DNA of 64,000 nt from Octopus sinensis (GCF_006345805.1 NC_042998.1:72106001-72170000), one strand, 5' to 3'. Positions 3,626-61,660 are shown, numbered from the stretch's first letter. Translations and numbers: made by a program. Notes: generated by a model not told the origin, from the letters alone.

Positions 3626-3804
3626 AACTCTTTCAAGACTGTGTTAAATTATATTAAATAATATTTTTTCAACCACTTTCCGTACATTAACAATTGATAC
3701 TCATTCGCATTCGTTCATCATAAACATTAATTGCATATATACTTAATATATATATATATATACCCATACACGGACAGATATGTCTACCCTATCCTATCCT
3801 ATCC

Positions 3805-3958
<154 letters not shown>

Positions 3959-13801: not shown

Positions 13802-13806
<5 letters not shown>

Positions 13807-13871
<65 letters not shown>

Positions 13872-13923
13872 GTATATATATATGTATATCTATATGTATA
13901 TATATGTATATATGTATATATAT

Positions 13924-13980
<57 letters not shown>

Positions 13981-14001
13981 ATATATATGTACACGTACAT
14001 G

Positions 14002-14034
<33 letters not shown>

Positions 14035-14830
14035 GTATGTTTCTATATGTATGTATATAACTCCATACGCTGGTACAGATAAATGTTTTGTATAAAATGT
14101 ATATCGATTGTGTTTAAGTAGTTCCAAGAAAATATAGAAATCGTTATTGATCTTTGATCTATATATCTACATCAAATAAGCAGAGAAGTTCATAGAAACA
14201 AATACACATCCGCAAACTTCAGAGCTACTATATCAGTGCTTGCTTATTTATTGATTGTCACTTGTAGAAACCTAGACCCTTATATATATATATATATACA
14301 CACACACATATATATATATATATATGCATATGTGAACGCGTGTTTGCGTGCGTGTGAGTATGCATGTGCGTGTTTTTGAGTGTACATTTGCGTGAGTGAG
14401 TGTGTGTTTATGTGTTGTTATGTGTGTAAATGTAGGAGGCATACATACAGTGAATAATACACAGTAAATACAAAACTAAAACTCGTGTGCGAGCACAGAA
14501 AGAGAGCGTATCTTAACCAGAAAAATAGGATGCACGCTCACATGAAACCAAATTTATGAACGCGTATACACATATTCATATATTTCATATCTGTATATAT
14601 GCGGATCTATATATATATATATGCGTATGTGTGTGTATGAGTGTGTGTGTGTGTAGCATCCCTATATCAATGCATTTTATACAACCATATGCATATAAAT
14701 CGATGTAATACGAACATATACATGTTTGTACGTATATACCCATCCATACATGCATTCGTCCATACATATGTATGTAGCTGTATGCTTATAAATAAGTTTA
14801 CAATTACACGCCAATATATATGTAGACATG

Positions 14831-14912
<82 letters not shown>

Positions 14913-15466
14913 CTGTGGATAAATATACGCATACACTTACGTATATATGTATATATATAAATACATGAACAGGAATCTCCTTCAGATTACATGCTATATT
15001 CTGATAATGCTACTTTGATATTATACAAACGTAAATAGCTTACCGACTGATCTTTTCTTTATGTAACACCACAATGGTACAGAAATATGGGGTATGAATC
15101 TGTATGTGTGTGAGAAAAAGAACAAAGAAGAAAACCATAATCCGATTCAAATTGAGAGCTTCTCGTCCAAATCAAATATAATTCCTTTACTTCAGAATAG
15201 AGGATGTCAAAAAGCTATGTATAAAGTACAAAGATTTTTATATTTATTTTTTTTTATCAGTGGACTAACACCTTCATCATCACAAATAATATATATTCAG
15301 TTGGATGAAGTTTTCTTTGTAAGATGATTGAATAGATGTGGGCTTCCTCATTTCATCTCTTTGCTAGCTTTTATAATATACACTCGCATACATTTTTAAA
15401 ACATGCATATAGCTATGCATACTCACACCCACCCATATATATGTATATATATATGTGTATATATAT

Positions 15467-15498
<32 letters not shown>

Positions 15499-15649
15499 AA
15501 TATGTATATATATATGTATATATGTATATATATATATATATGTATAAATATATATATATATATATATACATATATATATAGATATATATGCATATATATA
15601 TTTACATACATATATATGTAGATTCATACACACATGCATGCATACATAC

Positions 15650-22530: not shown

Positions 22531-22662
22531 CAAATCTGGGGTATTAAGCAGAATATTTGCTGTATCCCATCTTTTATAACAAGACAAAACAATGTACATG
22601 ATAATACTTCCAATCACTTAAGATCAGAAGCCATGAGAGACACTGCCTGGTACTGTATTTCA

Positions 22663-22787
22663 TCTTCTTCTTCTTCTTCTTCTTCTTCTTCTTCTTCTCT
22701 TCTTCTTCTTCTTCTTCTTCTTCTTCTTCTTCTTCTTCTTCTTCTTCTTCTTCTTCTTCTCTTCTTCTTCTTCTCTTCTTCTTCTTC

Positions 22788-22855
<68 letters not shown>

Positions 22856-23026
22856 TAGTTTTATTTTTATAACGTGCTTTCACTTGGTATGTGCTGTGAT
22901 TTGTTGTGATGCTCTTATGGCTACTGTATTGAAAGTGTTATCATTATTATTATTATTATTATCATTATTATTATTATCATCATTATTATTATTATTATTA
23001 TTATTATATTATTATTATTATTATTA

Positions 23027-23059
<33 letters not shown>

Positions 23060-23064: not shown

Positions 23065-23420
23065 GTTGATACGGTGTATACTTTCAGTGCTGATATCAGA
23101 ATGGAGTTCGGACTGAGAAAGCGAGGTGTGTTAGTTTGAAGGCAAAATCAAATGTTGCGTCGATATCTTTGGGTGAGGTTATGAAGCAGAGAGAAGAGAC
23201 GGGGTATAAGTACTTGGGGATTGTGGATATGGAGTACTTCCACAGACTGAGAACGATCCTTAAATTGAAATTAAACAGACGGAATAAGATTGAAGCTATC
23301 AACACCTGGGCAGTTTCACTTCTTAGATATGGAACAGGGGTAATCGCATGGGCAGTAGACGAAGTAAACATCCTCGACAGGAAGAAAAGGAAGTTGCTGA
23401 AAAGATATTGGATACGCCAC
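23065..23420 (+). mobile_element. Dong/R4-type LINE RT C-terminal fragment
   Basis: ORF 23136-23426: GYKYLGI...RLRTILKLKLNRRNKIEAINTWAVSLLRYGTG...LDRKKRKLL. Confidence 0.85.
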
Positions 23421-26148
23421 CCATAAAGCATGCACCACAGAATACAGATTATAAAGTAAAATAAAAAATATATACAATGCCCTATGCTGACAACCGTTTC
23501 AAGATGGCTATAACTTACGCAGTAACTATTCTCATGAGTAACGTGTACCTTATTACATAGGATCATGTCCAAAGAGAAGTCCAAATGAAATTGTTAAAGT
23601 AATCTAGGACTGCTTTTGAAGAGTAGAATAGCAAATGCGAATTGTCTAGAGGTGCTTATTAATATAAAGTTTTAAAGAGAATAGATGGGGACAGGCATTG
23701 GAAGAAGCGGATAGAAATATTGAATGAGTGGTGGTAGTTTATAGTCGAAACGAACGAGACGGGTGGAAATGATTAATGAGAGTAAGGTATTTAAGAGTGG
23801 AAACGAACGAAGAATTTGCTTATCAAAGATAAGTATAAGGAAGAACTGTTTATGAAAAAAAATAAAGATAAAAGAGATGAAATTAAGGGTTGTTTCAAGA
23901 AACAGTGCTGACATTACATCGTGCGTGGCCAAATGGGAGGGCAAATCAGCCATGTTCAAGCAATAAAGTGGATACGAATATCAGAGGCAATAGACATAAT
24001 GCATTTTAATGAAGCATTGAAATGTATTAAAATGTTGAGTCGATCGGTAAAAATAGTTTTTCTTTTCTTGTACTCAAAACTTGTAAAAACCCTATCATTT
24101 CAGCATCGGCACACACTCAACTCTAGTTGAGAAAATCGATAAACATCATATTCTTTTATAAGCTTCTGCCATAACATTATATCAAATCCTTTTTTTTTAA
24201 TGTCATGCAATGCTATCGACAATCAGATGAAGATTTTATTGAATTTGTTCCATAAGCCTGAACCATATCTCTGTTCATTGCGAGAGCGACCACAAAATTA
24301 ATTTATCAGGCACTTTGATTCACTTAATTATATTTGAGTTTCACTTCACCCATCATAGCAATGTGGGTATAATTTTTTCATTCAATCTGAATTTGAATTT
24401 ACATGCCATGTTTCTCTGAGGCGAATATAACAATAGTTTGAATGATTTTATAACTAGGCGTTCAACCTTTAGACATAGAAGTATGTAAAACACACCTGAA
24501 GCGCGTGGAAGTAATTTTGGGTATAAACCAGATCAAACTGCGTATTGGGCCTTACAGAACTTTATCAAATAGAAATTGAATTACAGGATATTTTATGTAG
24601 ATTTTTGTTAATTAGCTGACAGTTTATGAGTCACATTCCACTTAAATTTCACTTCTGGCATAAGAAATTTTCTTCATTCAAATATCGCACTGGTGTGTTT
24701 ATCATGACAGATAATGTTGAATTGCCAGCTGATTCAGACTTAGTATAGAATATATATAGAATACCTGTAAGAAATTGCATTCAAAGTAAGTTGTCAATTG
24801 TAACAAAAAATCAGCGTTAATAGTCTCAAAACACGTTGTCACCTGACTCGCCAGTATATGAATAACTCATGCGATATAGCCAAACATATATACAAGTAGA
24901 AATGTTAGACACGTTATCTTCTATCTTTCACCTTTTACTTGTTTCAGTCATTAGACTGCGGTCATTCACCGTCTGGAAGGTTTGTTTAGTCAAATGGGTC
25001 GGCTACAATACTTATGTATGTTTTATCAGCATTTGTTCGAATATCAAAGTCAAGATCTCGTTGTTCTGGGCTTAACACTGACACTATATTTTATGCCTTA
25101 AACCGGTAAAACTTTATATTTCATTTTGTTTTGATTACTGCAGTAAAGGTTAAATTACTTTCTGTCGTTTCCCACTTCACTAACCATTCAAAATGTAGGA
25201 GATTTCGTATAATCACCATTGTTGATAGCAAGCTATCTTCTTAAAAGAGACATAATGTATTGTAGGCCTGGTTTCACTTCATAGGGAAATAACTCTGATC
25301 ATAGAAGGCTTCGACCAATCTAACACGACCAATCCTATGTTTGAAAGTAATATTTATCAGGCACGTTTCTACCCCGGGTATTTAATTATTAATCCGTTCT
25401 AATTTTAGATAGCATTAGTCCTCTAGATAATGCTTTCTATATATTAGTTTATGGTAATGTTACTTATGATAAATTGTCGAACCGGTGTTGTGAATGTGAA
25501 GCCGTGTGTGTTTACAAAACCCCATTGTCTCTCATTTTGAAAAGATTTACTAAGAGACTTTTAAATTAATTATGTTCTGTTTGGTAAGTGGGTTTTGCTT
25601 TCTGTTTGATTTGAAAATCTTCTAACACAGTTAAACAAACAGCGTATATATATATTGCAAATGTTCTTTCATTTGTCTTACCAATCATCACGTATTTTTT
25701 GTTTATTTTGGTTTACTTTAAACTAAAGACCTTGAATATATAAGCGGCATAAACTGCACGCTCAGCATTAAGAGCAACGTGTATATTATGATTCAAGCAA
25801 GATTTGAAAATTTTCACTATATTTGCTTTCAGTGACTATTTGTATGATTAATGATGTCATTCCTAGTGTCTGAAACGGTCTGCTTCATTCCTGCTGATGT
25901 GCGTTTACTCTGCGCCAGAGTGTTGAGTAAGTACATAGTTTACTGGAAGTAACATACTCAATCCATAGTATGTTACATGATTACCATCCGGGAATATAGG
26001 TGTTAGTGATCTTTGTAAAAATATGATTTAGAATTCAATATAAATATAGACCTTATTTTGTAATACATAGTTTATCAGATACTGCTTTGGTAGGTTTTAT
26101 CTTAAAAAATTTAGGGAAAATATATTCCATTTCATCATTAGTGAGATG

Positions 26149-30520: not shown

Positions 30521-32021
30521 ACATGTCCTAAAATATATATAAATATATAGTTTGGAATGTTTTCTTGTTTGTGTTTATGCGCGTGTGTGTATGTGTTTGT
30601 GTATGTGTGTGTGCCTTGTGTGTGTGTGTGCATGTGTGCGTGTGTGAGTGATTGTGCTTGTGTGTATGTGCCTAACCATTGCTTGTTATATGATTCCCAA
30701 TTTCAAAACTTCGTAATTAAATTTTATTGCAAATACCGTATACGCAAAAATATTACGTTACATAAAACAACATTCAACATTTAATTACTAAGGGATATTT
30801 ATTTATTAGTTACATTATCTTTCCAAAATATTTGAGTCTATATTCTATAGTAACAGTTATTCAGCATCATTATACTTCAGTGTCTTCTTATAACGTAAAT
30901 GATATCCTTACTAACACACGTGTCGTACGATTCATAGGTACACAATCATAGACACGTTTTTGTATGAATGCGTGTACATAAATGTGTACATGTGTAACAG
31001 TCTATTTCTGTACGACCACCTTTGTATATTTCTTGGCATTGATGATTCTACTCGCATCTAGGTACTATGTAACTGAATACTCTCTAATTACTGATATCAT
31101 TAGTGTTATTGAATATCTCATTCTGTATCTGTGAAACCAAGACAGTTATTACAGAGATAGTAACTGTAAATTGGCATTAATGATTTGGTCTGGGACCAGG
31201 CTTATAAATGGTAAAGCATGCTTCGTAGTCACTAATGCTTAGAATAATACGGTTAGATCGGGTTATTAACACACGTAAAATGTATTCTGTTACTCGTTTT
31301 GAAAGTTTGATATGTAGTTGCTGTGATCTATCAGAAATATATACCCAAATGAGTTAGATTCGACTTTGGAACTCATAAGCGTTTTAGGTTGACTGCTTAA
31401 TTGTGTTAAGTGGAAGGGAGGTAGATAAATTGTATATAAATATCAACAATAACTAAAAACCTTATAATCGCAGTACACTACTGGCAGAAGGAGACGTAAT
31501 ACACCTTCGCTGACAGTTTGAGGGCCATCAATAAAGTGCGTAAATGCATTGCTTTTACTTCAAAAACAAAACGTAAAATTTTCTTTCGATGCTCATTTAC
31601 TCAATTTCCTCGACCCCAAATATAAAGCCGAAAACAAAGAATGCCACTAATCACTTTGTCGTGCCAACGAATTTATCTGCTCGCTTTGATGTGAGTGCAT
31701 ATATCGCTATTGAAAAGGTTTAGATATGTGAGGATTGATTAATTTCAAACAAAACTGCCGCATATAGATATATTTATATATATATATATATATATTAATC
31801 AATATAGGGTGGCAAGGAAAATTTTGTAGAATTTTATTGCCACCAGCGGCCCAGTAGGAAAAAATTAAATAGTCATAGACCATTTTTAAGTTCAACATTA
31901 ACAATTAAGGAACGGCCATAATAGGCCATTCACCCACTAGAAATAACAGCCAAAGCTTCTACCGCAAATAAAGATTAACTCCGTAAACAGGAGAAAATTA
32001 AAAAAAACATTTACCCTGTAA

Positions 32022-32126
32022 TTTCTTGTACGGTATACCGTTTCATCCGCTGTTTAATGGTAAACTAACCTGATTAAATTAAATCAAGCCAATCTTCCAT
32101 AAGCCCTCGGATTCTTCAGCAAGAAA
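32022..32126 (-). ncRNA. Type I hammerhead ribozyme, array copy 1
   Basis: Reverse complement of the 33167-33271 motif. Confidence 0.88.
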
Positions 32127-32511
32127 TAGCTCAAGTCGGAACAGATATTTACACGAGGCATACCCAATCTTGCCAAGGCAATATCTGACCTAAAATTTTC
32201 AAATCGTCGCACTCGCGCCAAATTTATCGGCAGCAAATAAATATCAGCCGTCGATTCCATTACGGAATTAACCAAAAAATTCATAATTAATCAATATAGG
32301 GTGGCAAGGAAAATTTTGTAGAATTTTATTGCCACCAGCGGCCCAGTAGGAAAAAATTAAATAGTCATAGACCATTTTTAAGTTCAACATTAACAATTAA
32401 GGAACGGCCATAATAGGCCATTCACCCACTAGAATAACAGCCAAAGCTTCTACCGCAAATAAAGATTAACTCCGTAAACAGGAGAAAATTAAAAAAACAT
32501 TTACCCTGTAA

Positions 32512-32614
32512 TTTCTTGTACGGTATACCGTTTCATCCGCTGTTAATGGTAAACTAACCTGATTAAATTAAATCAAGCCAATCTTCCATAAGCCCTCGGA
32601 TTCTTCAGCAAGAA
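32512..32614 (-). ncRNA. Type I hammerhead ribozyme, array copy 2
   Basis: Same motif with 1-nt deletions in stem I and the stem II extension; core intact. Confidence 0.82.
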
Positions 32615-33166
32615 TAGCTCAAGTCGGAACAGATATTTACACGAGGCATACCCAATCTTGCCAAGGCAATATCTGACCTAAAATTTTCAAATCGTCGCAC
32701 TCGTGCCAAATTTATCGGCAGCAAATAAATATCAGCCGTCGATTCCATTACGGAATTAACCAAAAAATTCATAATTAATCAATATAGGGTGGCAAGGAAA
32801 ATTTTGTAGAATTTTATTGCCACCAGCGGCCCAGTAGGAAAAAATTAAATAGTCATAGACCATTTTTAAGTTCAACATTAACAATTAAGGAACGGCCATA
32901 ATAGGCCATTCACCCACTAGAAATAACAGCCAAAGCTTCTACCGCAAATAAAGATTAACTCCGTAAACAGGAGAAAATTAAAAAAACATTTACCCTGTAA
33001 TTTCTTGTACGGTATACCGTTTCATCCGCTGTTTAATGGTAACGGCTGATATTTATTTGCTGCCGATAAATTTGGCGCGAGTGCGACGATTTGAAAATTT
33101 TAGGTCAGATATTGCCTTGGCAAGATTGGGTATGCCTCGTGTAAATATCTGTTCCGACTTGAGCTA

Positions 33167-33271
33167 TTTCTTGCTGAAGAATCCGAGGGCTTATGGAAGA
33201 TTGGCTTGATTTAATTTAATCAGGTTAGTTTACCATTAAACAGCGGATGAAACGGTATACCGTACAAGAAA
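33167..33271 (+). ncRNA. Type I hammerhead ribozyme, array copy 3
   Basis: TTTCTTG(33167-73)-CTGAAGA(33174-80)-ATCCG...CGGAT(33181-248)-GAAA(33249-52)-CGGTATACCG-TA^(33264)-CAAGAAA(33265-71). Confidence 0.9.
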
Positions 33272-33658
33272 TTACAGGGTAAATGTTTTTTTAATTTTCT
33301 CCTGTTTACGGAGTTAATCTTTATTTGCGGTAGAAGCTTTGGCTGTTATTTCTAGTGGGTGAATGGCCTATTATGGCCGTTCCTTAATTGTTAATGTTGA
33401 ACTTAAAAATGGTCTATGACTATTTAATTTTTTCCTACTGGGCCGCTGGTGGCAATAAAATTCTACAAAATTTTCCTTGCCACCCTATATTGATTAATTA
33501 TGAATTTTTTGGTTAATTCCGTAATGGAATCGACGGCTGATATTTATTTGCTGCCGATAAATTTGGCGCGAGTGCGACGATTTGAAAATTTTAGGTCAGA
33601 TATTGCCTTGGCAAGATTGGGTATGCCTCGTTGTAAATATCTGTTCCGACTTGAGCTA

Positions 33659-33763
33659 TTTCTTGCTGAAGAATCCGAGGGCTTATGGAAGATTGGCTTG
33701 ATTTAATTTAATCAGGTTAGTTTACCATTAAACAGCGGATGAAACGGTATACCGTACAAGAAA
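33659..33763 (+). ncRNA. Type I hammerhead ribozyme, array copy 4
   Basis: Identical motif; predicted cut after 33756. Confidence 0.9.
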
Positions 33764-34148
33764 TTACAGGGTAAATGTTTTTTTAATTTTCTCCTGTTTA
33801 CGGAGTTAATCTTTATTTGCGGTAGAAGCTTTGGCTGTTATTTCTAGTGGGTGAATGGCCTATTATGGCCGTTCCTTAATTGTTAATGTTGAACTTAAAA
33901 ATGGTCTATGACTATTTAATTTTATCCTACTGGGCCGCTGGTGCAATAAAATTCTACAAAATTTTCCTTGCCACCCTATATTGATTAATTATGAATTTTT
34001 TGGTTAATTCCGTAATGGAATCGACGGCTGATATTTATTTGCTGCCGATAAATTTGGCGCGAGTGCGACGATTTGAAAATTTTAGGTCAGATATTGCCTT
34101 GGCAAGATTGGGTATGCCTCGTGTAAATATCTGTTCCGACTTGAGCTA

Positions 34149-34253
34149 TTTCTTGCTGAAGAATCCGAGGGCTTATGGAAGATTGGCTTGATTTAATTTA
34201 ATCAGGTTAGTTTACCATTAAACAGCGGATGAAACGGTATACCGTACAAGAAA
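34149..34253 (+). ncRNA. Type I hammerhead ribozyme, array copy 5
   Basis: Identical motif; predicted cut after 34246. Confidence 0.9.
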
Positions 34254-34638
34254 TTACAGGGTAAATGTTTTTTTAATTTTCTCCTGTTTACGGAGTTAAT
34301 CTTTATTTGCGGTAGAAGCTTTGGCTGTTATTTCTAGTGGGTGAATGGCCTATTATGGCCGTTCCTTATTGTTAATGTTGAACTTAAAAATGGTCTATGA
34401 CTATTTAATTTTTTCCTACTGGGCCGCTGGTGGCAATAAAATTCTACAAAATTTTCCTTGCCACCCTATATTGATTAATTATGAATTTTTTGGTTAATTC
34501 CGTAATGGAATCGACGGCTGATATTTATTTGCTGCCGATAAATTTGGCGCGAGTGCGACGATTTGAAAATTTTAGGTCAGATATTGCCTTGGCAAGATTG
34601 GGTATGCCTCGTGTAAATATCTGTTCCGACTTGAGCTA

Positions 34639-34743
34639 TTTCTTGCTGAAGAATCCGAGGGCTTATGGAAGATTGGCTTGATTTAATTTAATCAGGTTAG
34701 TTTACCATTAAACAGCGGATGAAACGGTATACCGTACAAGAAA
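34639..34743 (+). ncRNA. Type I hammerhead ribozyme, array copy 6
   Basis: Identical motif; predicted cut after 34736. Confidence 0.9.
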
Positions 34744-35130
34744 TTACAGGGTAAATGTTTTTTTTAATTTTCTCCTGTTTACGGAGTTAATCTTTATTTG
34801 CGGTAGAAGCTTTGGCTGTTATTTCTAGTGGGTGAATGGCCTATTATGGCCGTTCCTTAATTGTTAATGTTGAACTTAAAAATGGTCTATGACTATTTAA
34901 TTTTTTCCTACTGGGCCGCTGGTGGCAATAAAATTCTACAAAATTTTCCTTGCCACCCTATATTGATTAATTATGAATTTTTTGGTTAATTCCGTAATGG
35001 AATCGACGGCTGATATTTATTTGCTGCCGATAAATTTGGCGCGAGTGCGACGATTTGAAAATTTTAGGTCAGATATTGCCTTGGCAAGATTGGGTATGCC
35101 TCGTGTAAATATCTGTTCCGACTTGAGCTA

Positions 35131-35234
35131 TTTCTTGCTGAAGAATCCGAGGGCTTATGGAAGATTGCTTGATTTAATTTAATCAGGTTAGTTTACCATT
35201 AAACAGCGGATGAAACGGTATACCGTACAAGAAA
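35131..35234 (+). ncRNA. Type I hammerhead ribozyme, array copy 7
   Basis: Same motif with a 1-nt deletion in the stem II extension; predicted cut after 35227. Confidence 0.88.
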
Positions 35235-37649
35235 TTACAGGGTAAATGTTTTTTTAATTTTCTCCTGTTTACGGAGTTAATCTTTATTTGCGGTAGAAGC
35301 TTTGGCTGTTATTTCTAGTGGGTGAATGGCCTATTATGGCCGTTCCTTAATTGTTAATATATTATATATATATATTATATATATATATATATAGAGAGAA
35401 GAGAGAGAGAGAGGAGAAACAGAGAGAAACAGAGAGGGTGAGAGAGGAAGGAAAAGAAGAAGACGAACAAAGTCGGCAGATATTTTGATAAATCACTGAA
35501 TATTATTGTTTGAAACAGACGAAATAAAAATGAACGGTGATATTATCAAAGACATCCCATCCAAAGCATTTCGTCAGTATTCGAAACAGTGTATCTAGTA
35601 GTACAATAATCAATGATTTGTCATTATTAAAGATAGTACACGATACAAATAACAACCAAAAATCCATGTAAGTGTACTTACATGGATTTTTGCTTGTTAT
35701 TTTTATCGTGTTTAACTATCACATTGAGATTGCACTGCCATCTTTTGATTGTGCTGTGGGTACCTGAAAGTGAATGTTTCTGGCTTTTGTAGATTATCAA
35801 AAATAGAAAGTATTTCGGTATATATAATTCATCAGAAGATATATGTGAGGTGGATGGAGACAATAACTAGTCATCTTTACTAAATGATACAGAATTTGAA
35901 ATCGAAGGACCCGTTTGCTCGAAAAATAATATTCTGTATATAAATAGTTTGAGAAGGGAAAACGGGGATTCCCAAAGTACCTGGTAACTATTTTGATCTC
36001 GTTGCAGATGTATTCGAAAATGATAGATCAGAGAATGGTAATTGTTGAGAACATAATAACTAAAGTAAAAATAACTGTTTGATGAACATATGTCACATTA
36101 CTTATGTTTTACAGAAGAAATATAATAAATTGGATTAAGTTTTCTCCAAGTCCAAAACCTTTCATCAGACATTTCGTTTGTATATGAGTGTAAAGAAAGA
36201 AGAAAGGAGTAAGTTAGGTGTTAGAGAGTAAAGCATAAAATCAATTTGAAGCCAATATCAAGTGAGTAAATTTTAAAAGTTGCTTGAAATTCTCTGTTTA
36301 AAGATCATGAATATTATAGTACTTATGTAAAATATGAAAAGGCACCAGTGTGAAGGATTAGTTTCTCGATTGCATACACACGAATGAATAAGTTATATAA
36401 CACGTTAAAAATCGCAATCAATTCACCTCGAAATAAAAGAAAAATAACTGCATTTGTAAAAGGGAAGGAAATGCTAGACAATGCGCGCTTAGATATACTT
36501 CTGCGTTTAAAGAAGTGAGTGGCCAAAGGTTGTACAGTTTTATTTATAGGTTAGTTCGAAAAGAATGAGTTGGAGATCGAACATAACAACAATAGGAATT
36601 CAACATTCAATATGATGGTTGACTGAATAACCCTTATTTCAAAAAAGGTTAAACTCAGAGGCAGCTATGCGAAACACAATATAAAAATATTTTTGAAACA
36701 CGAAACAGTTTTCAGCAACGGAATAAATACAAAAATTAAAGATGTTACACTTATTGTAGAAAATTTAAAGCAGTGTATATTTTATGATAAGTTAAAATAA
36801 TTACATTGAAAGTGTTCGGACAATCATGAATATATTTTCGGTCCTCCGTCTAATTAAATCACCGGTCTTGTAGTTAGACAAAGAAATCAATACTGCCTTT
36901 TGATTTTCTGGTATCTTCTTCCATTCAATATAATGCATTTTAGCTTTCCTATTATTTAATGTTGCCAAATTATGCAAATTTCTGTTGTTGTTGTCATTTT
37001 TAAACAATATTATAGCGGATTGTACAACTTCTATTGTATTGCTGATGGTAGGTATATAGCAGCTAAGTGGTTTGATAAACACTCTAATGTGTTTTGCTAT
37101 GAGGCTGATAGATTTTCTATTGTTATAAAGATCTCGTTTAATTCTATTTTTATAACAGTCAGTATTATGATAAGGAAAGCACCATAAATACTCATTAAAT
37201 TATCCGGGGAATATTTGTTTTTATTGGAGTCTTTTCTTATAATTGTAAACTGTCTTTTATAGGTATAGTACGAGCAGACTCACTAAGCTGTTACAACAAA
37301 CTGTATTGAGATGTTAAAAAGTTATTCAGGGACATTTCGTCAGTTAATTGAAAGAGAGGAATGTAACAGTCGAGTGATCGTTACAAATGAACTCTTTTAT
37401 TATACAAATGACAATGTAAATGTGCAGACAGACGGGATTGCTAACCATACAGGTTGCAGAAACAGTAACAGAATAAAGAAAAAAGATTAAGTAAGCAAGG
37501 AAATTAAACATTGAAATTAAGAGTTATAAATATTAACTTATTTATATTTACTAACAATGGGATTGCCTTTAAAGAAAGAAACGTTTTATTTTATTGCATT
37601 TTTTACACCATCATTGAAGACATACTAAAGATAATAATCACCTGAAATG

Positions 37650-40290
37650 CTGACATCAGAAACTACATAAATGCCTATGCGTCTGGTGTTCGACATTATG
37701 GTGGTATCTGCGTATTTTGAAACGGTTATCCCACGTCCTAATTCAGGCAGTATGCTTTTAGTAACCGGTAGTTATGCGTTCAGCTTTCAGTATTCGGGTA
37801 CCTGCCTACGAAATCTATCTAGTTCGTCTATGCAGATCACAAATTTGTTTATGATTAGGTCGACGATTTTAAAATGTGGTCAACATATACTATCGTTATC
37901 CACTGGCCAACAGAATAATCTCTCTAGATACGACCTAGATGACCCGATGCGGTTCGTTCATGTCCAAACTGGTACATTTGGAAAATCTTGACAATAACTG
38001 TCGTTGACCCATCGTCCCCTGTTAATCTAGATGCGCATGCTCAGAGCTGTCCCGTTCACTCGAAATCAGCAATTCCATTCATATTCACCTTTCAAAACTT
38101 TTAGAGCCGACGCTTCCATCTCCAACGTCATATTCTTTTTCAATAGCAAAATAGATGGGTGCATGATCAAAGGGGAAGGATTAGGCTTTCAACACTTTCA
38201 ATTTGGTTCACAATAACCTCCTTCTCTAAGGTCAAACCATACATAATGCATCTATGTTATGGTCAAAGCAATGCAGAGATTCATATTGCGATGAACTCAA
38301 CCGATAGCTTGATCACTGCAACTCAACGGCATGGTACGGCATGGAAATAACATCTGTCGCTCTGTGCACACCTCTTAAGTCCTGTAAACGACACTTTCAT
38401 AATTCAAGAATTTTTCTCGAACAGACAACATCCCCCGTCTAGCACCTCCAGCCTTGAAGCTTCTTAAAATTAACCCCAGCTCCTTCCTTAAAGATATTTA
38501 CACCGACCAGTAAGTTGAATCTCTTCGCTCTTAGAATCTCTCTGATATCTGAATGTCGACGCTCTTCCCAGACACTATCTTACTTTGGAAAATCCACCGA
38601 TTACATAGCCTAATTAGGAGAGGTATTTCAGATCTTGGCATTGCTCTTGCCAGACACTATTTTCTTTGCAAAATCCACCGATTACATAGCCTAAATAGGA
38701 GAGGTTTTTCAGATCCTGGTATTGCTCTAGGTATCTCGATGTATGCTTGATCCGGGATTGTATCTGAAAGAGACGAGGTGTGGAAAAATTAATGTAGCAA
38801 ATGGTAACCACACCTGCACATTGTCGAAGAAATGTTGCAGCCTTATTGATTGTCTGCACATCATCAAACTCTGTGTCTATTGACTGCAAATGGGGATCTA
38901 TGCTAGAGGAATGAGACCGTTCTAGAGAAAGAGGACGGTCAGGAGTTTCATTCCTGGGACTTTTAAAAACGGGCAATGCGTAAGGGTCAGACGGCATTAG
39001 AGAACATCGCCTCGTAACCGTCTTAGAACACTGCCAATAACGTCTATGTGCATATTATCCGACATTATGACAGTGATCGCGTCCGCGTATACCAACGCGG
39101 TTCTCCTGCATCCTAAGTTGTGCAGAATGCCCTATGATTTCTCTAGGTTCAGCAATAGTGGCTTGAGGATCAGTAAATACGGATTAGTCTCCGGGATACA
39201 ATATATATATATCACGCACATGATCCTTACTACCAAGCTGATGAACCTGTACTTATGGCGCATAGCAATCGCTAAACTTTATGATACTACCGTGGTCGAA
39301 ATTTAATCTTAGCAGAACATTTAGCCGAAACGATCAATCTTGTCATTTTTGATTGGGTTTTTCAGCAGCGCCACACTTCCTCGATTTGCGCTAGTCGAAA
39401 TTTTCCTGTTATTATGTTAGTTACTATAGATATCTGCCAAGATGTCTACAAATATTTCAGCTACATGAAAGTAAACTCGCATGGCTGACCATACACACCA
39501 GGCAACTGCATTCTTTCCATTTTTTCTTATATTTCCGTGATTATCATTCGTTAAATTCCCCTGTTTTACTAAAAGTAATAGCAGGGCGTCCAGCTAGCTA
39601 CTGAATTCCATCATGCTTGCAACTTATACAGGATGGTCGATCGAAGCGCCGTTAAGAAGCTGTTAATCCTTTCTTGAGATGCCAGACTTGCATCGATTAT
39701 ATTGTGCCAACAACTCAATTCTGTATTTGTTGTATATTTGCGCTCACCCCCTGCTAGAAACATTTGGTTTTCCCCTTCTCATGTCTAAGAACACTTGCTT
39801 TAGCTATGATTATGCTACATTTGCGTTTTGCGTTAAGGAATGTAGTCGATAGCCAATTTCGCCGTGGGTACCTTAGTTGCTTTGGCTTTTTGAAGCCTTT
39901 TTTCTAAGTTTCTCAGTCGCTCTCATTTCCATTTTTCTTAACTGCTACATTCTCACAAAACTTAATCATTTCTATCCCAATCGCTCTTCAGGCCAAACCA
40001 GCAACTATTTTTCATGATTAGCGACATCAACATCTGCTTTACTAATTCACCAATTCATGCTCAGCGTCCTCTTACGTGATACTTGCCTAGGACGACTATC
40101 TACAAGAGGGTTACTCAACCATTTTTATCTACGGACCCATTTGATCACTGCTTCTTTCTGGTGGACCCCCTTAGTTATTTCATGTCTAAACACTAGTTTT
40201 ATATATACTTCTTCCAAAATTCCCGTTCCGTTTTTCACACATGAACTTGTGTGCGTTGAATTAGGTAAACCGTTCGAAAAAGAAAACTAA
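37650..40290 (-). mobile_element. Degenerate L1/Tx1-like LINE ORF2 remnant
   Basis: Minus frames give PGVYGQPCEF (cf. PGxDGLPYEF), PYLLILKPLL and LVYADAITVIMSD (decayed YADD). Boundaries approximate. Confidence 0.55.
38568..38730. repeat. Two tandem 82-bp diverged repeats
   Basis: CCAGACACTA...AAAATCCACCGATTACATAGCCTAA.TAGGAGAGGT at 38568 and 38650. Confidence 0.85.
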
Positions 40291-42230: not shown

Positions 42231-42506
42231 CTGCCATTTACCTAGTATTTTTATATGTGCTTGTTTGTATGTATATGTGTATGTATGTGTCTGTATGTGT
42301 GTGTGTATAGATTGATATATAAAGAGATAAATGCGTTTATGTATGCATTAATGCATATATGTATGTACGTATATATTTTCCAACTCAGTCTCTGGCTACT
42401 TTGACACTCATCTGTGCAGAGGGTTTGCAGGCAAGCTATGAATGCAGAAATGATGGAATTTACATAAAAGGCACACCTACGCGAGAGCATACACATCCAC
42501 ACACAT

Positions 42507-42518
42507 ATCTATCTATCC

Positions 42519-42593
<75 letters not shown>

Positions 42594-42617
42594 CATCTAT
42601 CTATCTATCTATCTATC

Positions 42618-42654
<37 letters not shown>

Positions 42655-43579: not shown

Positions 43580-46200
43580 ATGTATATATACATGCATATA
43601 TGTGTACAGGACACCAAAAAATACGTAGAACACAAGAAACGAAAACGGACTTTTTCAAACAACGAAAAAAACGAGTACAAGATATACAACACAAGGAACA
43701 TTCCCCTTCTTCAGCTGCCCCTGCTTCGACTACTCCATGTTTCGAAGATAAGGGCAAGACACGACTTCGATGAAACAGTCCTTCCCGCAAAGCAAATTAA
43801 ATAAACTTTTAAATAAAATTTGGGATTTTTTGCGGAGAGGTAAAAATGGTGACAAGAACAGGACAGTAAAAACAAAACAAGACGGTAAAAGCAATACAAG
43901 AAAAAAACAGTAAAAGACAGGACAAGGAAAATAACTCAGTAAAAATAAAGGATAAGCGCTTTTAAGCCGAGACGATGGAAAAATTATTTTGAACGCATTG
44001 AGAGAACGGCTTACAAGGACGGGAGAAGCCGTTGTAGACTTGTCGAAGGCAGTAGTCAGTAAGAAAGTTAGTTAGCCTCTGGTCAGCGACGAGAGGGAGG
44101 AGGAGGAGGAGTGAGAGAGAGGGAACAGTGGTAGGGAGAGAAGAAGAATAGGGAAGGGTGGAAGAGAAAACCAGAAAGGATGAAAAATAAGAGAGCAAGT
44201 GAGACAGGCAGGGAGGAAAGTAGGGAGGAGAGGTCAAATTAAGAGTTAAGAGTGCGCATCATAATTATTAAAATAAAACTTACTTGGAAGTTGATGCGTG
44301 GCGTTCGATCATACAATAACAAATTAATAAATAAAACATATGCAAGTATGTGTATATGTATGTGTGTATATATATATATATATATCAGTTGAATAAAGTT
44401 AAAACATGGTCTGGTTTTCAGGTTTTTTTATTATGGTATTTTAATATTAAAAAAAGTATTTTGTAAGACTCATACGGTTAAATTAGCGCTTTCATTCATT
44501 CAAATATTTTAAACTCACAGTTAATTTTTGACAAAATTAGTACCTCAGAGAACGCTCCAACAAGCTGAATTTTTAGAATACCTTTTTGACCAATCCGCAT
44601 GCAGCTTAAACATCATTCTGTAACTTGTATATATTTATATACTAGAGGTATTTTCTATTCCACACCATTAACTGTTTTTTATATTACTGCAGTTATTTCC
44701 GTTCAAAACAGGTCTGAACATTTTAATAAAGCGTTTCTTTCTTTTATATTTCTTCGAACCTCACTTGTGTCATGTACTTTGGAGAACGTCAGTGTTCCGG
44801 ATTTTTTGTCCGTGGACTTGCGAGCGTTCGGATAATGCATTCCCTGTCTCGCCTATATATAATTCCACGCAATTCGGGCATTTAATGCAGAACATCAAAT
44901 TTCTGCTTTGCAGTTCATATCTGCATTTACGAAAATCTGTCTATTTTTTTTCCAATGGAACTACCCGTATGCATGTATTGAGACGTTCTGCGTCTGTTAT
45001 CATTACACTTGAATTTTTAGAATGTTTTATCCTGTTCATGTTGAATGTTGCCTTTATTAATAGTTTCTTTAGGTTATGTGGTTGTCTTTTACTTAAGACA
45101 GGTGATTGATTAGTTATTGATTTTTTAATATTTCACTTAATTTTATGATTGTCAAATTTGCTTTGACGATGATAAAATGGGTTGGTGATGCGGATTGCGC
45201 GTTACTAGAAATGGTATTGTGTTACGTTGATGAGTTCGTCTTTTTCATTGAGCTCCAAGGTGTTCTATATGTATTTTTTCTGCGTGCTGTCTGGTATTTT
45301 CTATAAGTAGGAGAGGGTAATTCTGTTTCAGCAGAAATCCTTTAAGTTGTATAAGTCTTGTGTTTCTGGTATTTGTTGGATCGTTCTAAGTGGTACTGAA
45401 GTTGTGAGGAACTCAACTGTCATTTAAACACATTTGAAACCTGATGATTACACTATATATATCAAAGCGATAATTTAACTATATGACCATTAATTATTTA
45501 TTTTAATGTTAAAATGCCATAATAGAAAACGTGAAAACCGGACCATGTTTTAATCTTATTCAACTGATATATTATTCTATATACCTTCACTCAAATACGA
45601 AACGGTATATATGTATATGTATATGTGTGTGTGTTTGTTTGTATATGTATATTTGTATGTATGTATTTATGCGTTTGTACATCTCTGCCTCTCTCTCACT
45701 CTCTCTATGTATATATATGCGCGTGTGTCTTTGGAGGAGTGTGTATACATATATGATTTCTGCTGTGGCATGAAGACAAATAGGGAATATAAAGAAAGAT
45801 AAAAATAAAAATAGAGAAGTAAAAAAAGAGAAGCTAGGAAAAAAATTGAAAGCAGAGAAAAGAGTGAAAGAAACAAAGAAAGGGAAAAATCCAGAGGAAA
45901 CGAAAGGTGCACTTTAATAAGGCAATAGAAGGAGGATGTGTAGGATTTAGAATGGTTAAAGAATTCAAGGACAAAAAGAATTCAATGGAAAATATTAGAG
46001 ATAAGTGAGCGAATGCACCGAGAAGAAGTGTGAATGAAGTGTGATTACAGGAACTTTTGGAAAGAAAGTTATTCAATGTGCATGGAAAACCAGAATTGTA
46101 TATCAGAAAATTATAATTAATAAGAAAGAAAAGGAAAAAGAAAGAGAAAGTAACACTCTAGAAGGTAGGGTACATAGAATATCTTAGCAGCAGGAAAGCT
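43580..46200. mobile_element. Mixed degenerate retroelement (likely PLE) fragments and purine-rich tracts
   Basis: Low-complexity, coding-like composition with no diagnostic motif read confidently. Confidence 0.25.
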
Positions 46201-48732: not shown

Positions 48733-50440
<1,708 letters not shown>

Positions 50441-50914: not shown

Positions 50915-51039
50915 TAATAATAATAATATTAATAATTGTTTAAACAGTAGGCAATCTAATGTCTGTGTAACGTTTTAGATCTGGTAGCGTATAAATCGAA
51001 ACTTGAAAGAGTTGGCAAATATTTTTACTGGATATTATT

Positions 51040-51480
51040 TCAGCATTATACAATCAAACCTGCTGACAAATGGTACAAGCACCACTTTGTGACATTAACT
51101 GAGGGAGAAAATATAACGATTCTTTGGTACTTTTCAGTACATACAGACCAAACCATCAAAGCTAATAAGCCAGATATGTTTGTGAAAGACCAAAACAATA
51201 AAATCTGTTTATTGGTTGACATGAGCATAGCTTGTGATCATAATATCTCGGCAAAAGTGTTTGATAAGCTCAGAAAATATAAAAATTTGCTGACTGAAAT
51301 CGAAAAAAATGTGGCATCTGAAGTCGTTTACAATATTAGTGATTGCTAGTTCACTCGGAATGATCAAAAAAGGAATAGAAAATTATTTGAGGATGATCTG
51401 TGATTTACCACTCATGCAAGAAATGCACCAAATAGAACTAATATATCACATGTACTGAGAAGAGTATTTTCAGTGTGAAT
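51040..51480 (+). mobile_element. Dong/R4 LINE restriction-like endonuclease fragment
   Basis: ORF 51089-51349: ILWYFSVHTDQTIKANKPDMFVKD...CLLVDMSI...KLRKYKNL. Confidence 0.85.
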
Positions 51481-58696: not shown

Positions 58697-58875
<179 letters not shown>

Positions 58876-60282
58876 ATTTAATACTTTTCGTTCTGTCATG
58901 GAGATATTTTAAAACATTTATATATTTCCATTATTTGCAATATGTATGAACTTACAGTATTTTTCTACGAAATGTATTTCCATTATTTTGCCCTTAAATA
59001 CAAAAATGTTTGGTAAATACGATGTGGAAAACGATTTTGTCATGACCAAATTTCCCCGTGGCATTCAGCGTTTCAATAAAACATTATAGCATTTTTCTCA
59101 ATAAAGTTATTTCATACAAAACTTCTAGAAAACAAGTGGAGTATACAGAATACAATAAAATAGCAAACAAAACATATACAAATATGAAAATACGGTAAAC
59201 AAAATAAATATAAAATATTAAATTTTAAAACGTTTTCAGAATCAATTTCTTTAGAAGGTGAAGAAAATAGAAAAAAATATAAGACAAAAGAAATAAAACA
59301 TTTCTCAATAATGGAATTATTTATCGGTTAGATTCAATATAAAAATCCAAGTAGAAATCTTTGAAAACCTATTATAACAACCATTTCATTTATATTTCTT
59401 ACAAACGGGAAGTGCACGTTTTTATAGATGAAAAAGAAACAAAAACAAAAACGCTCCATACATTTAGAAAGTGTGATTGAAAGAAAAAATATAAAGAGTT
59501 TCTATTATTCGAATTTACAACAGAAAAAATTATTTATTTGCTTCATTTTCATTCTATAGTTAAAAAATATTGATCTTGAAAGTATTACAATTGTTTAAAG
59601 GGCATTCTTAGAAAACGTAAAGCTATCTCGACAAATATATTCGTTGATTTACGCATTAACTTTCAAACGGTTCTTTGGTGCTTGGCTATGTAATAGTAAA
59701 GATTTGAAGCTTACTTTTAAAAACAGTTTGGGTGGGACTGTTCATATTGTGAATGTTAACACATTATACAGGCTATGTGTGAAAAGAACATGCATTGTTT
59801 GCAGGTATATTTGAGTAGGTTTAAGTTTGAATTACTATGGGTAGCTAGATATAAAAGATATGATAATTTATAAGTATGTATCACTATAACACAGCCAGAA
59901 GCTAAAAATTTCATCTGTATTTAGGATAATGTTTGGCATTTATTTGAATCACATAACAGCCATTCAAACAAGTAAGATTTATGAAGTGATCCTAACAATC
60001 GTGTTTCCTCTTCCATTCAGAAGTAACATAATGCTGAAGAACTTATACATCTTCACATTTACATATTTTCCCCTTGATTACTATCAGCGTCCAAGATTTA
60101 ATGATATAAAAGTGAGATATTATACACTTTTGTGTGTGCATGATTGTTTTTCCAAATGTCTATCTTATACTATGCCCTTCATTTTGTCGCCACACATGAA
60201 CCAGAGAAGAAGCTTGCCGATGATACAATATGGTGTGTTCTCTCCTGCACCATGTCGCGAATGGTATTTCTTAGCCTCATAA

Positions 60283-60974: not shown

Positions 60975-61660
60975 AGTAAGTGTGGAAAATAATATCCATC
61001 ACATGATGTCCGTTTTCATTGATGCATTTTCGAAGGCGTTCTTCAGCATTGCTTTGTCAATTTGGGCGACTTCCACGCGAATAGCTTCCTTCAAATCGTC
61101 AAATATACGGGGCTTATGCACATACAGACGTGCCATGAGGTTTCCCCAAAAGAAAGAAAAACATACATAGAGAAATCAGGGGACCGACACGGTAAAGGGA
61201 TATCAGGAAACCTGGAAATGAAACGGTCACTCAAGTTAGGACGAAGAACATCCATTGTTGCTCTAGCTATATGGACCGGCGCCCCATCCCGCTGAAACCA
61301 CACATGAATCGGCATACGTTTTCGTTGTAATCCAAGCACAAAGAAGTTGTTAATCATCCCGATGTAACACTCGAAATTCCCAGAAATAATATTTCCATTA
61401 TTGATTTCAAAAAAGTAAGTACCAATTACGGTAGCTTTTCCAACAGCAGACCAGACCACCAACTTTGGGCTGTTCAGTGGTATTTCTTACAGTTTTCGAG
61501 GATTTTCAAGAGCTCAATAACGACAGTTTTGTTGATTCACCATGCCATTGAGATGAAAATGAGCTTCATTAGTCATTAATAATATAGTTTGTCATTTGCA
61601 CCAAAAATTGCTTCATCTGAGGTTCGAAGTTTTGCTGCTGTGCATTGTCGTATAAAACTG
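60975..61660 (-). pseudogene. Tc1/mariner-superfamily transposase remnant
   Basis: ORF 61091-61462: VWFQRDGAPVHIARATMDVLR...RFISRFPDI..PCRSPDFS, matching the QDGAPxH and WPPRSPDL motifs. Confidence 0.85.

What the first reader, a model, noticed from the sequence alone, without database searches (positions are those of the whole stretch)
31794..35358. Hammerhead-ribozyme tandem array: candidate cephalopod retrozyme producing a ~490-nt circular RNA
Seen: ~7.3 near-identical ~490-bp units inserted in a (TA)n tract. Each complete unit has every hammerhead core element in order: 7-bp stem I TTTCTTG/CAAGAAA, CUGAAGA, stem II ATCCG/CGGAT, GAAA, stem III, and a GUA site. Predicted cuts after 33264, 33756, 34246, 34736 and 35227 give 490-492-nt monomers. 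Established: metazoan non-LTR retrozymes are non-coding tandem repeats with type I hammerheads that are processed to abundant circRNAs and are thought to be mobilised by Penelope-like RTs. Inference: this is such a family, with a monomer at the long end of those I know; I am not aware of it being described in cephalopods but cannot search.
Basis: partly seen in the sequence, partly recalled or inferred. Interest (0 to 1): 0.93.

Follow-up and report, generated by a model that had tools for sequence, protein, structure and literature searches.

The report
Hammerhead-ribozyme tandem repeat (retrozyme) in octopus-like DNA
A 3.6-kb block of about seven nearly identical 490-base repeats, each carrying a complete self-cutting hammerhead RNA motif, sits inside a (TA)n microsatellite as two head-to-head arrays; it is most likely a young copy of a known kind of non-coding mobile element (an animal "retrozyme") in a group, cephalopods, where I found none described.

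Summary
The 3,565-bp array (31794-35358) is two head-to-head blocks, not one run of 7.3 units: about 2.5 units with the ribozyme on the minus strand (31794-33042) and about 4.7 units on the plus strand (33043-35358). Every complete unit has a full type I hammerhead. The five predicted plus-strand cuts are correct and give monomers of 492, 490, 490 and 491 nt. Two more complete ribozymes and one truncated one lie on the minus strand. A motif this good never arose in 40 Mb of simulated sequence. Rfam's type I hammerhead model matches end to end, but below its curated threshold (21.4 against 34 bits), with a ~58-nt hairpin inserted in helix II. The ribozyme-sense RNA folds far better than shuffles (z = -6.0), and more so than the opposite strand (z = -3.2). 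Both outer ends are 3' ends of the sense strand, each ending ...TTAAT against (AT)n. That tandem/inverted, microsatellite-targeted layout is typical of Penelope-like element integration. Best reading: a young non-LTR retrozyme insertion in an octopus-like genome, a new member of a known kind. Self-cleavage, circular RNA, other genomic copies and conservation were not testable here. The 490-nt size is within the known range.

The parts
31762..31793 (.). Left flank: (AT)n microsatellite, half of the target tract
   Evidence: TRF (AT)17 at 31762-31795. The joined flanks form one continuous (TA)n.
31794..33042 (-). Left arm: 2.54 monomer units with the ribozyme-sense strand on the minus strand. 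The outer end is the sense 3' end at monomer position 234 (...UUGAUUAAU). The inner end is the sense 5' end at monomer position 457.
   Evidence: TRF period 488, 99% matches. Inverted-repeat arms 100% complementary to the right arm. 99.6% identical to the consensus. End mapping.
33043..35358 (+). Right arm: 4.72 monomer units with the ribozyme-sense strand on the plus strand. The inner 5' end is at monomer position 270. The outer 3' end is at position 131 (...UUGUUAAU).
   Evidence: TRF period 490, 99% matches. 99.74% identical to the consensus. End mapping.
35359..35393 (.). Right flank: (AT)n microsatellite, the other half of the target tract, followed by (AG)n
   Evidence: TRF (AT)19 at 35357-35393 and (AG)28 at 35393-35446.
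33166..33272 (+). Hammerhead 1 (type I), predicted cut after 33264
   Evidence: Motif search. Descriptor stems 8/5/3. RF00163 at 21.4 bits, full model, E 0.0056 in a 221-nt search.
33658..33764 (+). Hammerhead 2, predicted cut after 33756
34148..34254 (+). Hammerhead 3, predicted cut after 34246
34638..34744 (+). Hammerhead 4, predicted cut after 34736
35130..35235 (+). Hammerhead 5, predicted cut after 35227. It has a 1-nt deletion in the helix II extension.
32021..32127 (-). Minus-strand hammerhead, predicted cut between 32029 and 32028
   Evidence: RF00163 at 21.4 bits.
32511..32616 (-). Minus-strand hammerhead, predicted cut between 32519 and 32518. Stem I is reduced to 6 bp by a 1-nt deletion.
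   Evidence: RF00163 at 21.4 bits.
33000..33042 (-). Truncated hammerhead. Only the 3' part is present (end of the helix II extension, GAAA, helix III, GUA, 3' strand of stem I). It is cut off by the head-to-head junction and cannot cleave on its own.
   Evidence: 3'-half match at 33001-33028 with no 5' half. Junction mapping.

Best explanation
The locus is a young genomic insertion of a non-autonomous, non-coding retroelement of the animal non-LTR retrozyme kind, in an octopus-like genome.

Shown from sequence: each ~490-nt unit encodes one complete type I hammerhead ribozyme in a single polarity.

Inferred from the family:
- Transcripts spanning two or more units would self-cleave after each GUA, releasing 490-492-nt monomers with 5'-OH and 2',3'-cyclic phosphate ends.
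- A host RtcB-type ligase would close these monomers into a highly base-paired circular RNA.

Inferred from the anatomy of this insertion:
- The DNA copy was made by target-primed reverse transcription at a staggered break in a (TA)n microsatellite, most likely by a Penelope-like element's RT and GIY-YIG endonuclease.
- Each of the two target 3' ends primed at an A/U-rich ...UUAAU site of the RNA (monomer positions 131 and 234).
- The RT ran round the template 4.7 and 2.5 times. The template was a circle or, less likely, an uncleaved multimer.
- The two cDNAs were then joined head-to-head with 1 nt of microhomology ("twin priming").
For: Ribozyme:
- All conserved core positions and the three helices are present in the right order in 7 units: C3-A9 = CUGAAGA, G12-A14 = GAA, A15.1-U16.1, C15.2-G16.2, H17 = A, C1.1-G2.1.
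- Rfam RF00163 aligns across its whole model (1-45) with no non-canonical pairs, on both arms.
- Chance expectation for a motif this good is 0 in 40 Mb simulated.
[quoted passage not shown] A palindromic loop 3 is described for canonical metazoan hammerheads (PMC4209133).

RNA-level constraint:
- The circular sense monomer folds at -142.6 kcal/mol against -109.7 +/- 5.5 for dinucleotide shuffles (z = -6.0).
- The antisense strand gives -93.2 (z = -3.2).
- The sense fold has 21 G-U pairs among 147 pairs.
- Helices II and III have pair probabilities of 0.90-1.00. The full hammerhead fold lies only 3.2 kcal/mol above the minimum free energy.

Non-coding:
- The longest ORFs are 42-69 aa, with no homologue and no record. 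There is no tRNA-like part.

Retroelement and PLE signature:
- Tandem plus inverted 5'-truncated copies and a (TA)n target are hallmarks of PLE insertions (PMC8557442).
- Both outer ends here are sense 3' ends ending in TTAAT against (AT)n. The joined flanks restore a single (TA)n.
- All 11 unit differences but one are private to a single unit, as expected from repeated copying of one template.

Literature: animal retrozymes are tandem type I hammerhead repeats of low GC, expressed as circular RNAs and ligated by RtcB in vitro (PMC7229834).
Against: - The Rfam score is below the curated threshold (21.4 against 34 bits).
- Helix II starts with A10.1-U11.1 rather than the highly conserved G10.1-C11.1, and it carries a ~58-nt extension in place of loop 2. 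The usual loop1-loop2 tertiary contact may therefore be absent and cleavage may be slow.
- Stem I has only 2% probability in the thermodynamic ensemble of the circle.
- All copies are near-identical, so there is no covariation or conservation evidence.
- No second locus was found in the window or in the searchable collections. Mobility and multi-copy status are therefore unshown.
- No PLE reverse transcriptase was seen among the ten window ORFs tested.
- No expression data were available.
- 9 of the 11 unit differences are 1-nt indels in short runs. This hints at long-read consensus error and leaves assembly quality unverified.
Confidence: 0.8

Rival explanations
1. An ordinary satellite or minisatellite DNA that grew by unequal crossing-over. 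The hammerhead-like motif has no RNA function, and the inversion is a later DNA rearrangement.
For: All units are near-identical, so no selection on the motif can be shown. Only one locus is seen. The Rfam score is below threshold.
Against: - A complete hammerhead with 8/5/4-bp helices did not occur in 40 Mb of simulated sequence.
- The fold stability is strand-specific, z = -6.0 against -3.2.
- Both outer ends are sense 3' ends ending in TTAAT inside one (TA)n tract. That is hard to obtain from crossing-over followed by a random inversion.
Confidence: 0.07
2. The repeats are the pseudo-LTR or terminal region of an autonomous Penelope-like element, or a local amplification of one, rather than an independent retrozyme family.
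For: PLE pseudo-LTRs carry type I hammerheads, and retrozymes are reported to be related to pseudo-LTRs in Xenopus (10.64898/2026.07.22.740005). The tandem/inverted architecture is the PLE one.
Against: - There is no RT or GIY-YIG ORF between or beside the units. The ORFs are 69 aa or shorter and have no homologue.
- Seven consecutive ~490-bp units leave no room for a 2.5-4 kb PLE body.
- PLE hammerheads are described as minimal, lacking helix III (PMC7761336). This one has a 4-bp helix III with a tetraloop.
Confidence: 0.08
3. An assembly artefact (a fold-back chimera or a mis-expanded repeat) or a contaminant.
For: Complex PLE-type tandem/inverted structures are known to trouble assemblies (PMC8557442). 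Most differences between units are 1-nt indels in short runs, typical of long-read consensus errors.
Against: - The junction at 33042 is not a true palindrome. The two arms meet at monomer positions 457 and 270, unlike a missed-adapter fold-back read.
- Both flanks are the same (TA)n tract, within an AT-rich, microsatellite-rich context like the rest of the window.
- Monomer GC is 36% against 34% for the window.
Confidence: 0.05

Closest known systems
Metazoan non-LTR retrozymes (Cervera and de la Pena 2020, PMC7229834), for example those of the mussel Mytilus galloprovincialis, the coral Acropora millepora and the axolotl
   Same: Non-coding tandem repeats of low GC. One type I hammerhead per unit, in one polarity. 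A predicted highly self-paired monomer RNA. No LTR, PBS or PPT. The host lineage also carries PLEs.
   Different: - The monomer is 490 nt, against the 170-400 nt reported there.
- Helix II carries a ~58-nt hairpin extension where those have a short loop 2.
- The base pair next to the core is A10.1-U11.1 rather than G-C.
- Expression and circular RNA are not shown here.
- The head-to-head two-arm layout is not mentioned in that paper.
pDo500 satellite DNA of Dolichopoda cave crickets (PMC2837043)
   Same: A ~463-505-bp tandem repeat with one embedded type I hammerhead that processes multimeric transcripts to monomers. Natural variants tolerate changes at the 10.1-11.1 pair.
   Different: - There pDo500 is a high-copy satellite (about 5% of one genome) whose hammerhead is shown to be conserved across 12 species, with compensatory changes.
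- Here there is a single 7-unit locus with no comparative data, and no sequence similarity was tested or expected.
- The pDo500 hammerhead is a compact 49-nt motif.
Penelope-like elements (Penelope/Poseidon, Neptune, Naiad; PMC8557442, PMC4209133)
   Same: The insertion architecture is the same: partial tandems with an adjacent inverted 5'-truncated copy, and a bias for (TA)n microsatellites. Hammerheads occur in the terminal repeats of canonical PLEs.
   Different: No RT or GIY-YIG ORF is present here. The hammerhead has a real helix III rather than the minimal PLE form. No 30-40-bp 'tail' extension was recognised at either end.
L1 twin-priming inversions (from my own knowledge: Ostertag and Kazazian 2001)
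   Same: Two cDNAs are primed from the two target strands on one RNA. This gives a head-to-head inversion with both priming sites facing outward and a microhomology joint.
   Different: A different retroelement class. Here each arm is multimeric, implying a circular or multimeric template, and priming is at internal A/U-rich sites rather than a poly(A) tail.

Membership tests
Hammerhead ribozyme, type I (Rfam RF00163) | Conserved catalytic core: C3 U4 G5 A6 N7 G8 A9, G12 A13 A14, A15.1-U16.1, and cleavage after N-U-H (H17 not G) | tested here: met
   CUGAAGA ... GAAA ... GUA is present in 7 units with C1.1-G2.1 and C15.2-G16.2. The cmscan alignment shows all core columns matched.
Hammerhead ribozyme, type I (Rfam RF00163) | Three helices around the core, with helix I open and helices II and III closed | tested here: met
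   Stem I is 8 bp. Stem II is 5 bp plus an extension hairpin. Stem III is 4 bp with a UAUA loop. Helices II and III have pair probability 0.90-1.00. The full fold is 3.2 kcal/mol above the MFE.
Hammerhead ribozyme, type I (Rfam RF00163) | Score at or above Rfam's gathering threshold (34 bits) | tested here: not met
   21.4 bits, with E 0.095 in a 3.7-kb search and 0.0056 in a 221-nt search. I attribute the shortfall to the ~58-nt insertion in loop 2 and the A-U at 10.1-11.1. That attribution is an inference, not a computed result.
Hammerhead ribozyme, type I (Rfam RF00163) | G10.1-C11.1 pair and loop1-loop2 tertiary contacts of canonical metazoan type I hammerheads | tested here: not met
   The pair is A10.1-U11.1, and loop 2 is replaced by a long imperfect hairpin. 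Natural compensatory changes at this pair are reported in pDo500, and mussel retrozyme hammerheads also lack most of the conserved loop contacts.
Hammerhead ribozyme, type I (Rfam RF00163) | Mg-dependent self-cleavage | not testable with these tools
   This needs in vitro transcription.
Hammerhead ribozyme, type I (Rfam RF00163) | Covariation or conservation of the helices among diverged copies | not testable with these tools
   The only copies available are more than 99.6% identical. No relatives were found.
Metazoan non-LTR retrozyme | Short tandem repeats (dimers to multimers), one type I hammerhead per unit, low GC (<45-50%) | tested here: met
   There are 2.5 + 4.7 units of 489-492 bp with one hammerhead each, and GC is 36%. 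The size exceeds the 170-400 nt of PMC7229834 but falls within the 51-972 bp of the 2026 preprint.
Metazoan non-LTR retrozyme | Non-coding; no LTR, PBS or PPT | tested here: met
   ORFs are 69 aa or shorter, with no homologues. There is no tRNA-like element. The units are simple head-to-tail repeats. PBS and PPT motifs were not searched for specifically.
Metazoan non-LTR retrozyme | Monomer RNA predicted to be highly self-paired | tested here: met
   60% of bases are paired, at -142.6 kcal/mol and z = -6.0. The effect is strand-specific.
Metazoan non-LTR retrozyme | Expressed as linear and circular monomeric RNA | not testable with these tools
   No transcriptome was accessible. The ORF look-ups that might have touched RNA assemblies found nothing.
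Metazoan non-LTR retrozyme | Dispersed multi-copy family in the genome (evidence of mobility) | tested here: inconclusive
   No second copy occurs in the other 60 kb of the window. The source genome is not in the searchable collections, and the metagenome hits were chance matches in coding repeats. The insertion anatomy argues for retrotransposition.
Metazoan non-LTR retrozyme | Co-occurrence with autonomous PLEs in the same genome | tested here: inconclusive
   None of the ten window ORFs tested against Pfam matched any family at threshold, so no PLE RT was seen. The literature reports Penelope and Naiad elements in cephalopods, including Octopus spp.. The window's species is not established beyond 'octopus-like'.

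The most novel reading that the evidence does not exclude
The two-armed, head-to-head multimeric structure is a fresh footprint of twin-primed rolling-circle reverse transcription. Both outer ends are sense 3' ends ending in UUAAU inside one (TA)n tract, and the inner joint has 1 nt of microhomology. On this reading, a circular retrozyme RNA was copied by a Penelope-like element's RT and endonuclease. It would be direct structural evidence for the still-hypothetical link between retrozyme circles and PLE machinery, and for microhomology priming on a template that has no 3' end.
Probability: 0.4. Interest if true: 0.65.

Novelty: new member of a known kind. Interest (0 to 1): 0.5.

Why it matters
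If confirmed, it would add cephalopods to the animals that carry retrozymes. The papers I could search do not describe this. Only an automated count of 235 'hammerhead 1' hits in the giant squid genome exists (PMC6962438).

It would also add a hammerhead variant with a long helix II arm and an A-U pair at 10.1-11.1.

More usefully, the insertion looks very young: its units are 99.6% or more identical. Its ends and inner junction can be read base by base, which gives a concrete, testable model for how such circles are copied back into DNA. That model has three parts: priming at A/U-rich sites from both strands of a cut (TA)n, several rounds of template copying, and a head-to-head joint. It ties retrozymes to the integration signature of Penelope-like elements.

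It does not change the general picture, because retrozymes are already known to be widespread in invertebrates, molluscs included.

Tried and rejected
- **Rfam at gathering threshold, whole window:** no hit. At permissive thresholds only RF00163 is meaningful. All other hits are microsatellite look-alikes of miRNA families. No second ribozyme class appears on either strand, so a viroid-like element with ribozymes in both polarities is not supported.
- **Relatives in public DNA:** a gapped hammerhead pattern found 3 metagenome contigs and 0 viral contigs. The 3 are chance matches (two in Glu-rich coding repeats, one in 62%-GC soil DNA) with no further similarity to the monomer.
- **Using the monomer's 66-aa ORF as a handle:** no exact record and no homologue.
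- **Other copies in the window:** none. A weak descriptor hit at 43714-43636(-) is at chance level and has no Rfam support.
- **PLE genes nearby:** ten ORF fragments gave no Pfam match.
- **Organism:** a mariner-like fragment gave no homologue. A retrotransposon ORF tail gave 86% identity to an Octopus bimaculoides protein.
- **piggyBac-type DNA transposon** (TTAA at both ends): rejected. The two ends come from different monomer positions (234 and 131), so there are no terminal inverted repeats, and the body is only tandem repeats.
- **Fold-back assembly chimera:** rejected as the simple explanation, because the junction is not palindromic.
- **SINE or tRNA-derived element:** no tRNA-like sequence.
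- **Pol III transcription:** unlikely by inference, because the sense strand has T6-T7 runs.
- **Covariance model:** not built, because the copies carry no variation.

Full report
**1. What is in the sequence**

Tandem Repeats Finder reports two adjoining arrays. One is 31794-33042 (period 488, 2.5 copies, 99% matches). The other is 33042-35358 (period 490, 4.7 copies, 99% matches). They are flanked by (AT)17 at 31762-31795 and (AT)19 at 35357-35393.

The repeat finder shows that the two arrays are reverse complements of each other. For example, arms 31794-32397 and 34368-34971 are 604 nt long and 100% complementary.

Cutting the plus arm at the predicted cleavage sites gives monomers of 492, 490, 490 and 491 nt. 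The minus arm gives monomers of 489 and 490 nt. The consensus is 491 nt with 36% GC.

Both arms are 99.6-99.7% identical to the consensus. Nine of the eleven differences are 1-nt indels in short runs and two are substitutions. All are private to one unit, apart from a T7/T8 length change that is seen once in each arm.

**2. The hammerhead**

Exact-motif and descriptor searches find five complete motifs on the plus strand, with cuts after 33264, 33756, 34246, 34736 and 35227. They find two complete motifs on the minus strand, with cuts after 32519 and 32029 reading down. There is also a 3' fragment at 33000-33042 that is cut off by the inversion junction.

Read in hammerhead numbering, the motif is:
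- Stem I: AUUUCUUG/CAAGAAAU, 8 bp, with C1.1-G2.1.
- Core: C3-A9 = CUGAAGA.
- Helix II: AUCCG/CGGAU.
- G12-A14 = GAA.
- Helix III: A15.1-U16.1, C15.2-G16.2 and two more G-C pairs, capped by UAUA.
- H17 = A.

Two features are unusual:
- The pair next to the core is A10.1-U11.1 rather than the usual G-C.
- Loop 2 is replaced by a ~58-nt imperfect hairpin, made of a 4-bp and a 14-bp helix with several G-U pairs.

Rfam finds nothing at its gathering thresholds. With permissive settings RF00163 (type I) aligns over its whole length (1-45) with no non-canonical pair, at 21.4 bits against a threshold of 34, on both arms. I attribute the shortfall to the long insertion and the 10.1-11.1 change. That attribution is an inference.

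No other ribozyme family matches either strand.

As a chance control I ran a descriptor over 40 Mb of simulated sequence (both strands counted) with the window's dinucleotide content. The loose form (stems of at least 4/3/2) is expected 0.058 times per window. The strict form (at least 6/5/3; the observed stems are 8/5/3, excluding A15.1-U16.1) never occurred. Because all units are copies of one sequence, this is one independent occurrence.

**3. RNA-level signal**

Folded as a circle, the ribozyme-sense monomer reaches -142.6 kcal/mol, against -109.7 +/- 5.5 for dinucleotide shuffles (z = -6.0), with 60% of its bases paired. The antisense strand reaches only -93.2 kcal/mol (z = -3.2). The sense fold uses 21 G-U pairs out of 147, and these would be A-C mismatches on the other strand.

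Helices II and III, including the long helix II arm, are part of the minimum-energy fold and have pair probabilities of 0.90-1.00. Stem I has only 2% probability. Enforcing the complete hammerhead costs just 3.2 kcal/mol. Stem I then closes the rest of the molecule as a branched domain. The energy model ignores the tertiary contacts of the three-way junction.

Helix III with its flanks (ACGGUAUACCGU) is a perfect 12-nt palindrome. A double-hammerhead between neighbouring units is therefore also possible, as described for newt, viroid and PLE hammerheads.

**4. Not coding, not tRNA-derived**

The ORFs in the array are 42-69 aa. The 66-aa ORF has no exact record and no homologue. ARAGORN finds no tRNA in the window. 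The sense strand contains T6-T7 runs. By inference this argues against Pol III transcription of full units.

**5. Anatomy of the insertion**

In sense orientation the left arm ends at monomer position 234 (...CCUAUAUUGAUUAAU). The right arm ends at position 131 (...CCUUAAUUGUUAAU). Both are 3' ends, both end in UUAAU, and both abut (AT)n. The joined flanks read as one uninterrupted (TA)n tract followed by (AG)n.

The inner ends are 5' truncations at positions 457 (left arm) and 270 (right arm). One base (A at 33042) is compatible with either arm. The junction is not a palindrome, which argues against a missed-adapter fold-back read.

This layout is the one described for Penelope-like elements: partial tandems, an adjacent inverted 5'-truncated copy, and a preference for (TA)n (PMC8557442). 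Dual minimal hammerheads on opposite strands 100-700 bp apart have also been noted near PLEs (PMC4209133).

My reading is as follows; it is an inference:
- A staggered cut in (TA)n left two 3' ends.
- Each annealed to an A/U-rich site of the RNA and primed reverse transcription.
- The RT travelled 4.7 and 2.5 times round a circular template, or along an uncleaved multimer.
- The two cDNAs were joined by microhomology. This is analogous to L1 twin priming, a comparison I make from my own knowledge.

The sequence cannot distinguish a circular template from a multimeric linear one.

**6. Organism**

The window has 34% GC and is full of microsatellites. The C-terminal tail of a retrotransposon ORF, repeated at 48979-50412, is 86% identical to an uncharacterised Octopus bimaculoides protein (UniRef A0A0L8I0U5). 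This is the best named hit. That supports an octopus-like cephalopod but does not fix the species.

**7. Relatives elsewhere**

- There is no other copy in the window.
- A gapped hammerhead pattern hit three metagenome contigs, which turned out to be chance matches, and no viral contig.
- None of the ten ORF fragments tested from the window matched any Pfam family.
- The source genome itself is not in the collections I could search. Copy number, dispersal, conservation and the autonomous partner therefore remain open.

**8. Comparison with what is known**

Animal non-LTR retrozymes are tandem repeats with type I hammerheads and low GC. They are expressed as ~170-400-nt linear and circular RNAs that RtcB can circularise, and were studied in a coral, a mussel and the axolotl (PMC7229834; PMC7761336).

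A 2026 preprint on vertebrates reports consensus lengths of 51-972 bp. It also reports that 75% of families have at most seven units per array, and that retrozymes co-occur with PLEs and are related to their pseudo-LTRs (10.64898/2026.07.22.740005). The pDo500 hammerhead satellite of cave crickets is 463-505 bp and shows natural compensatory changes at 10.1-11.1 (PMC2837043). A 490-nt monomer is therefore not exceptional.

None of these papers mentions cephalopods. The giant squid genome paper lists 235 Rfam 'hammerhead 1' hits and Penelope elements, without further analysis (PMC6962438). PLE remnants are reported in Octopus spp..

**9. Verdict**

The retrozyme interpretation is the best explanation (confidence 0.8). 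It is a new member of a known kind.

Its individual points of interest are:
- The cephalopod host.
- The long helix II arm with A10.1-U11.1.
- The cleanly readable two-armed insertion in (TA)n, which fits PLE-type integration.

Cleavage, circular RNA and mobility remain to be shown. Interest 0.5.

Noticed in passing
window 48979-50412: A second tandem repeat: 444-bp units, 3.2 copies, 98% matches. Each unit holds the C-terminal end of a retrotransposon ORF on the minus strand (...VGALG...ALLGTAHILCRTLSIQ) followed by a long (TAT)n/(TTA)n tail. The ORF tail is 86% identical to an uncharacterised Octopus bimaculoides protein. A tandemly repeated 3' end of a retroelement next to a microsatellite is reminiscent of the partial-tandem insertions discussed for PLEs, but I did not classify the element.
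   Followed up: partly
window 43636-43714 (- strand): A weak hammerhead-like descriptor hit (CUGAAGA ... GAAA, stems only 4/3/2). It is at chance level (0.058 expected per window), has no Rfam support and is not repeated.
   Followed up: yes
window 61094-61486 (- strand): An ORF fragment that looks like a degenerate mariner/Tc1-type transposase (motif ...WFQRDGAPVH...; recognition from my own knowledge). It has no Pfam match and no word-sharing homologue in the protein database.
   Followed up: partly
window 23094-23423 (+) and 50960-51346 (+): ORF fragments that resemble the C-terminal parts of LINE-type reverse-transcriptase proteins (recognition from my own knowledge). Neither has a Pfam match at threshold. 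They are probably decayed retrotransposon remnants.
   Followed up: partly
whole window, e.g. 3789-3958, 13806-14059, 15435-15617, 22659-23059, 42506-42654, 58697-58877: Microsatellites are very dense: (TA)n, (CTAT)n, (TATC)n, (TTA)n, (TTC)n and (GT)n. They produce many false sub-threshold miRNA-family matches in Rfam (mir-297, mir-1277, mir-466).
   Followed up: yes
window 31794-35358: Nine of the eleven differences among repeat units are single-base indels in 2-7-nt runs. One of them shortens stem I of the minus-strand hammerhead at 32511-32616. The pattern looks more like long-read consensus error than mutation, so the units may in reality be identical.
   Followed up: partly
window 38561-38728: A short tandem duplication: 81-bp unit, 2.1 copies, 90% matches. 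Its nature is unknown and it lies inside a 146-aa ORF with no Pfam match.
   Followed up: no
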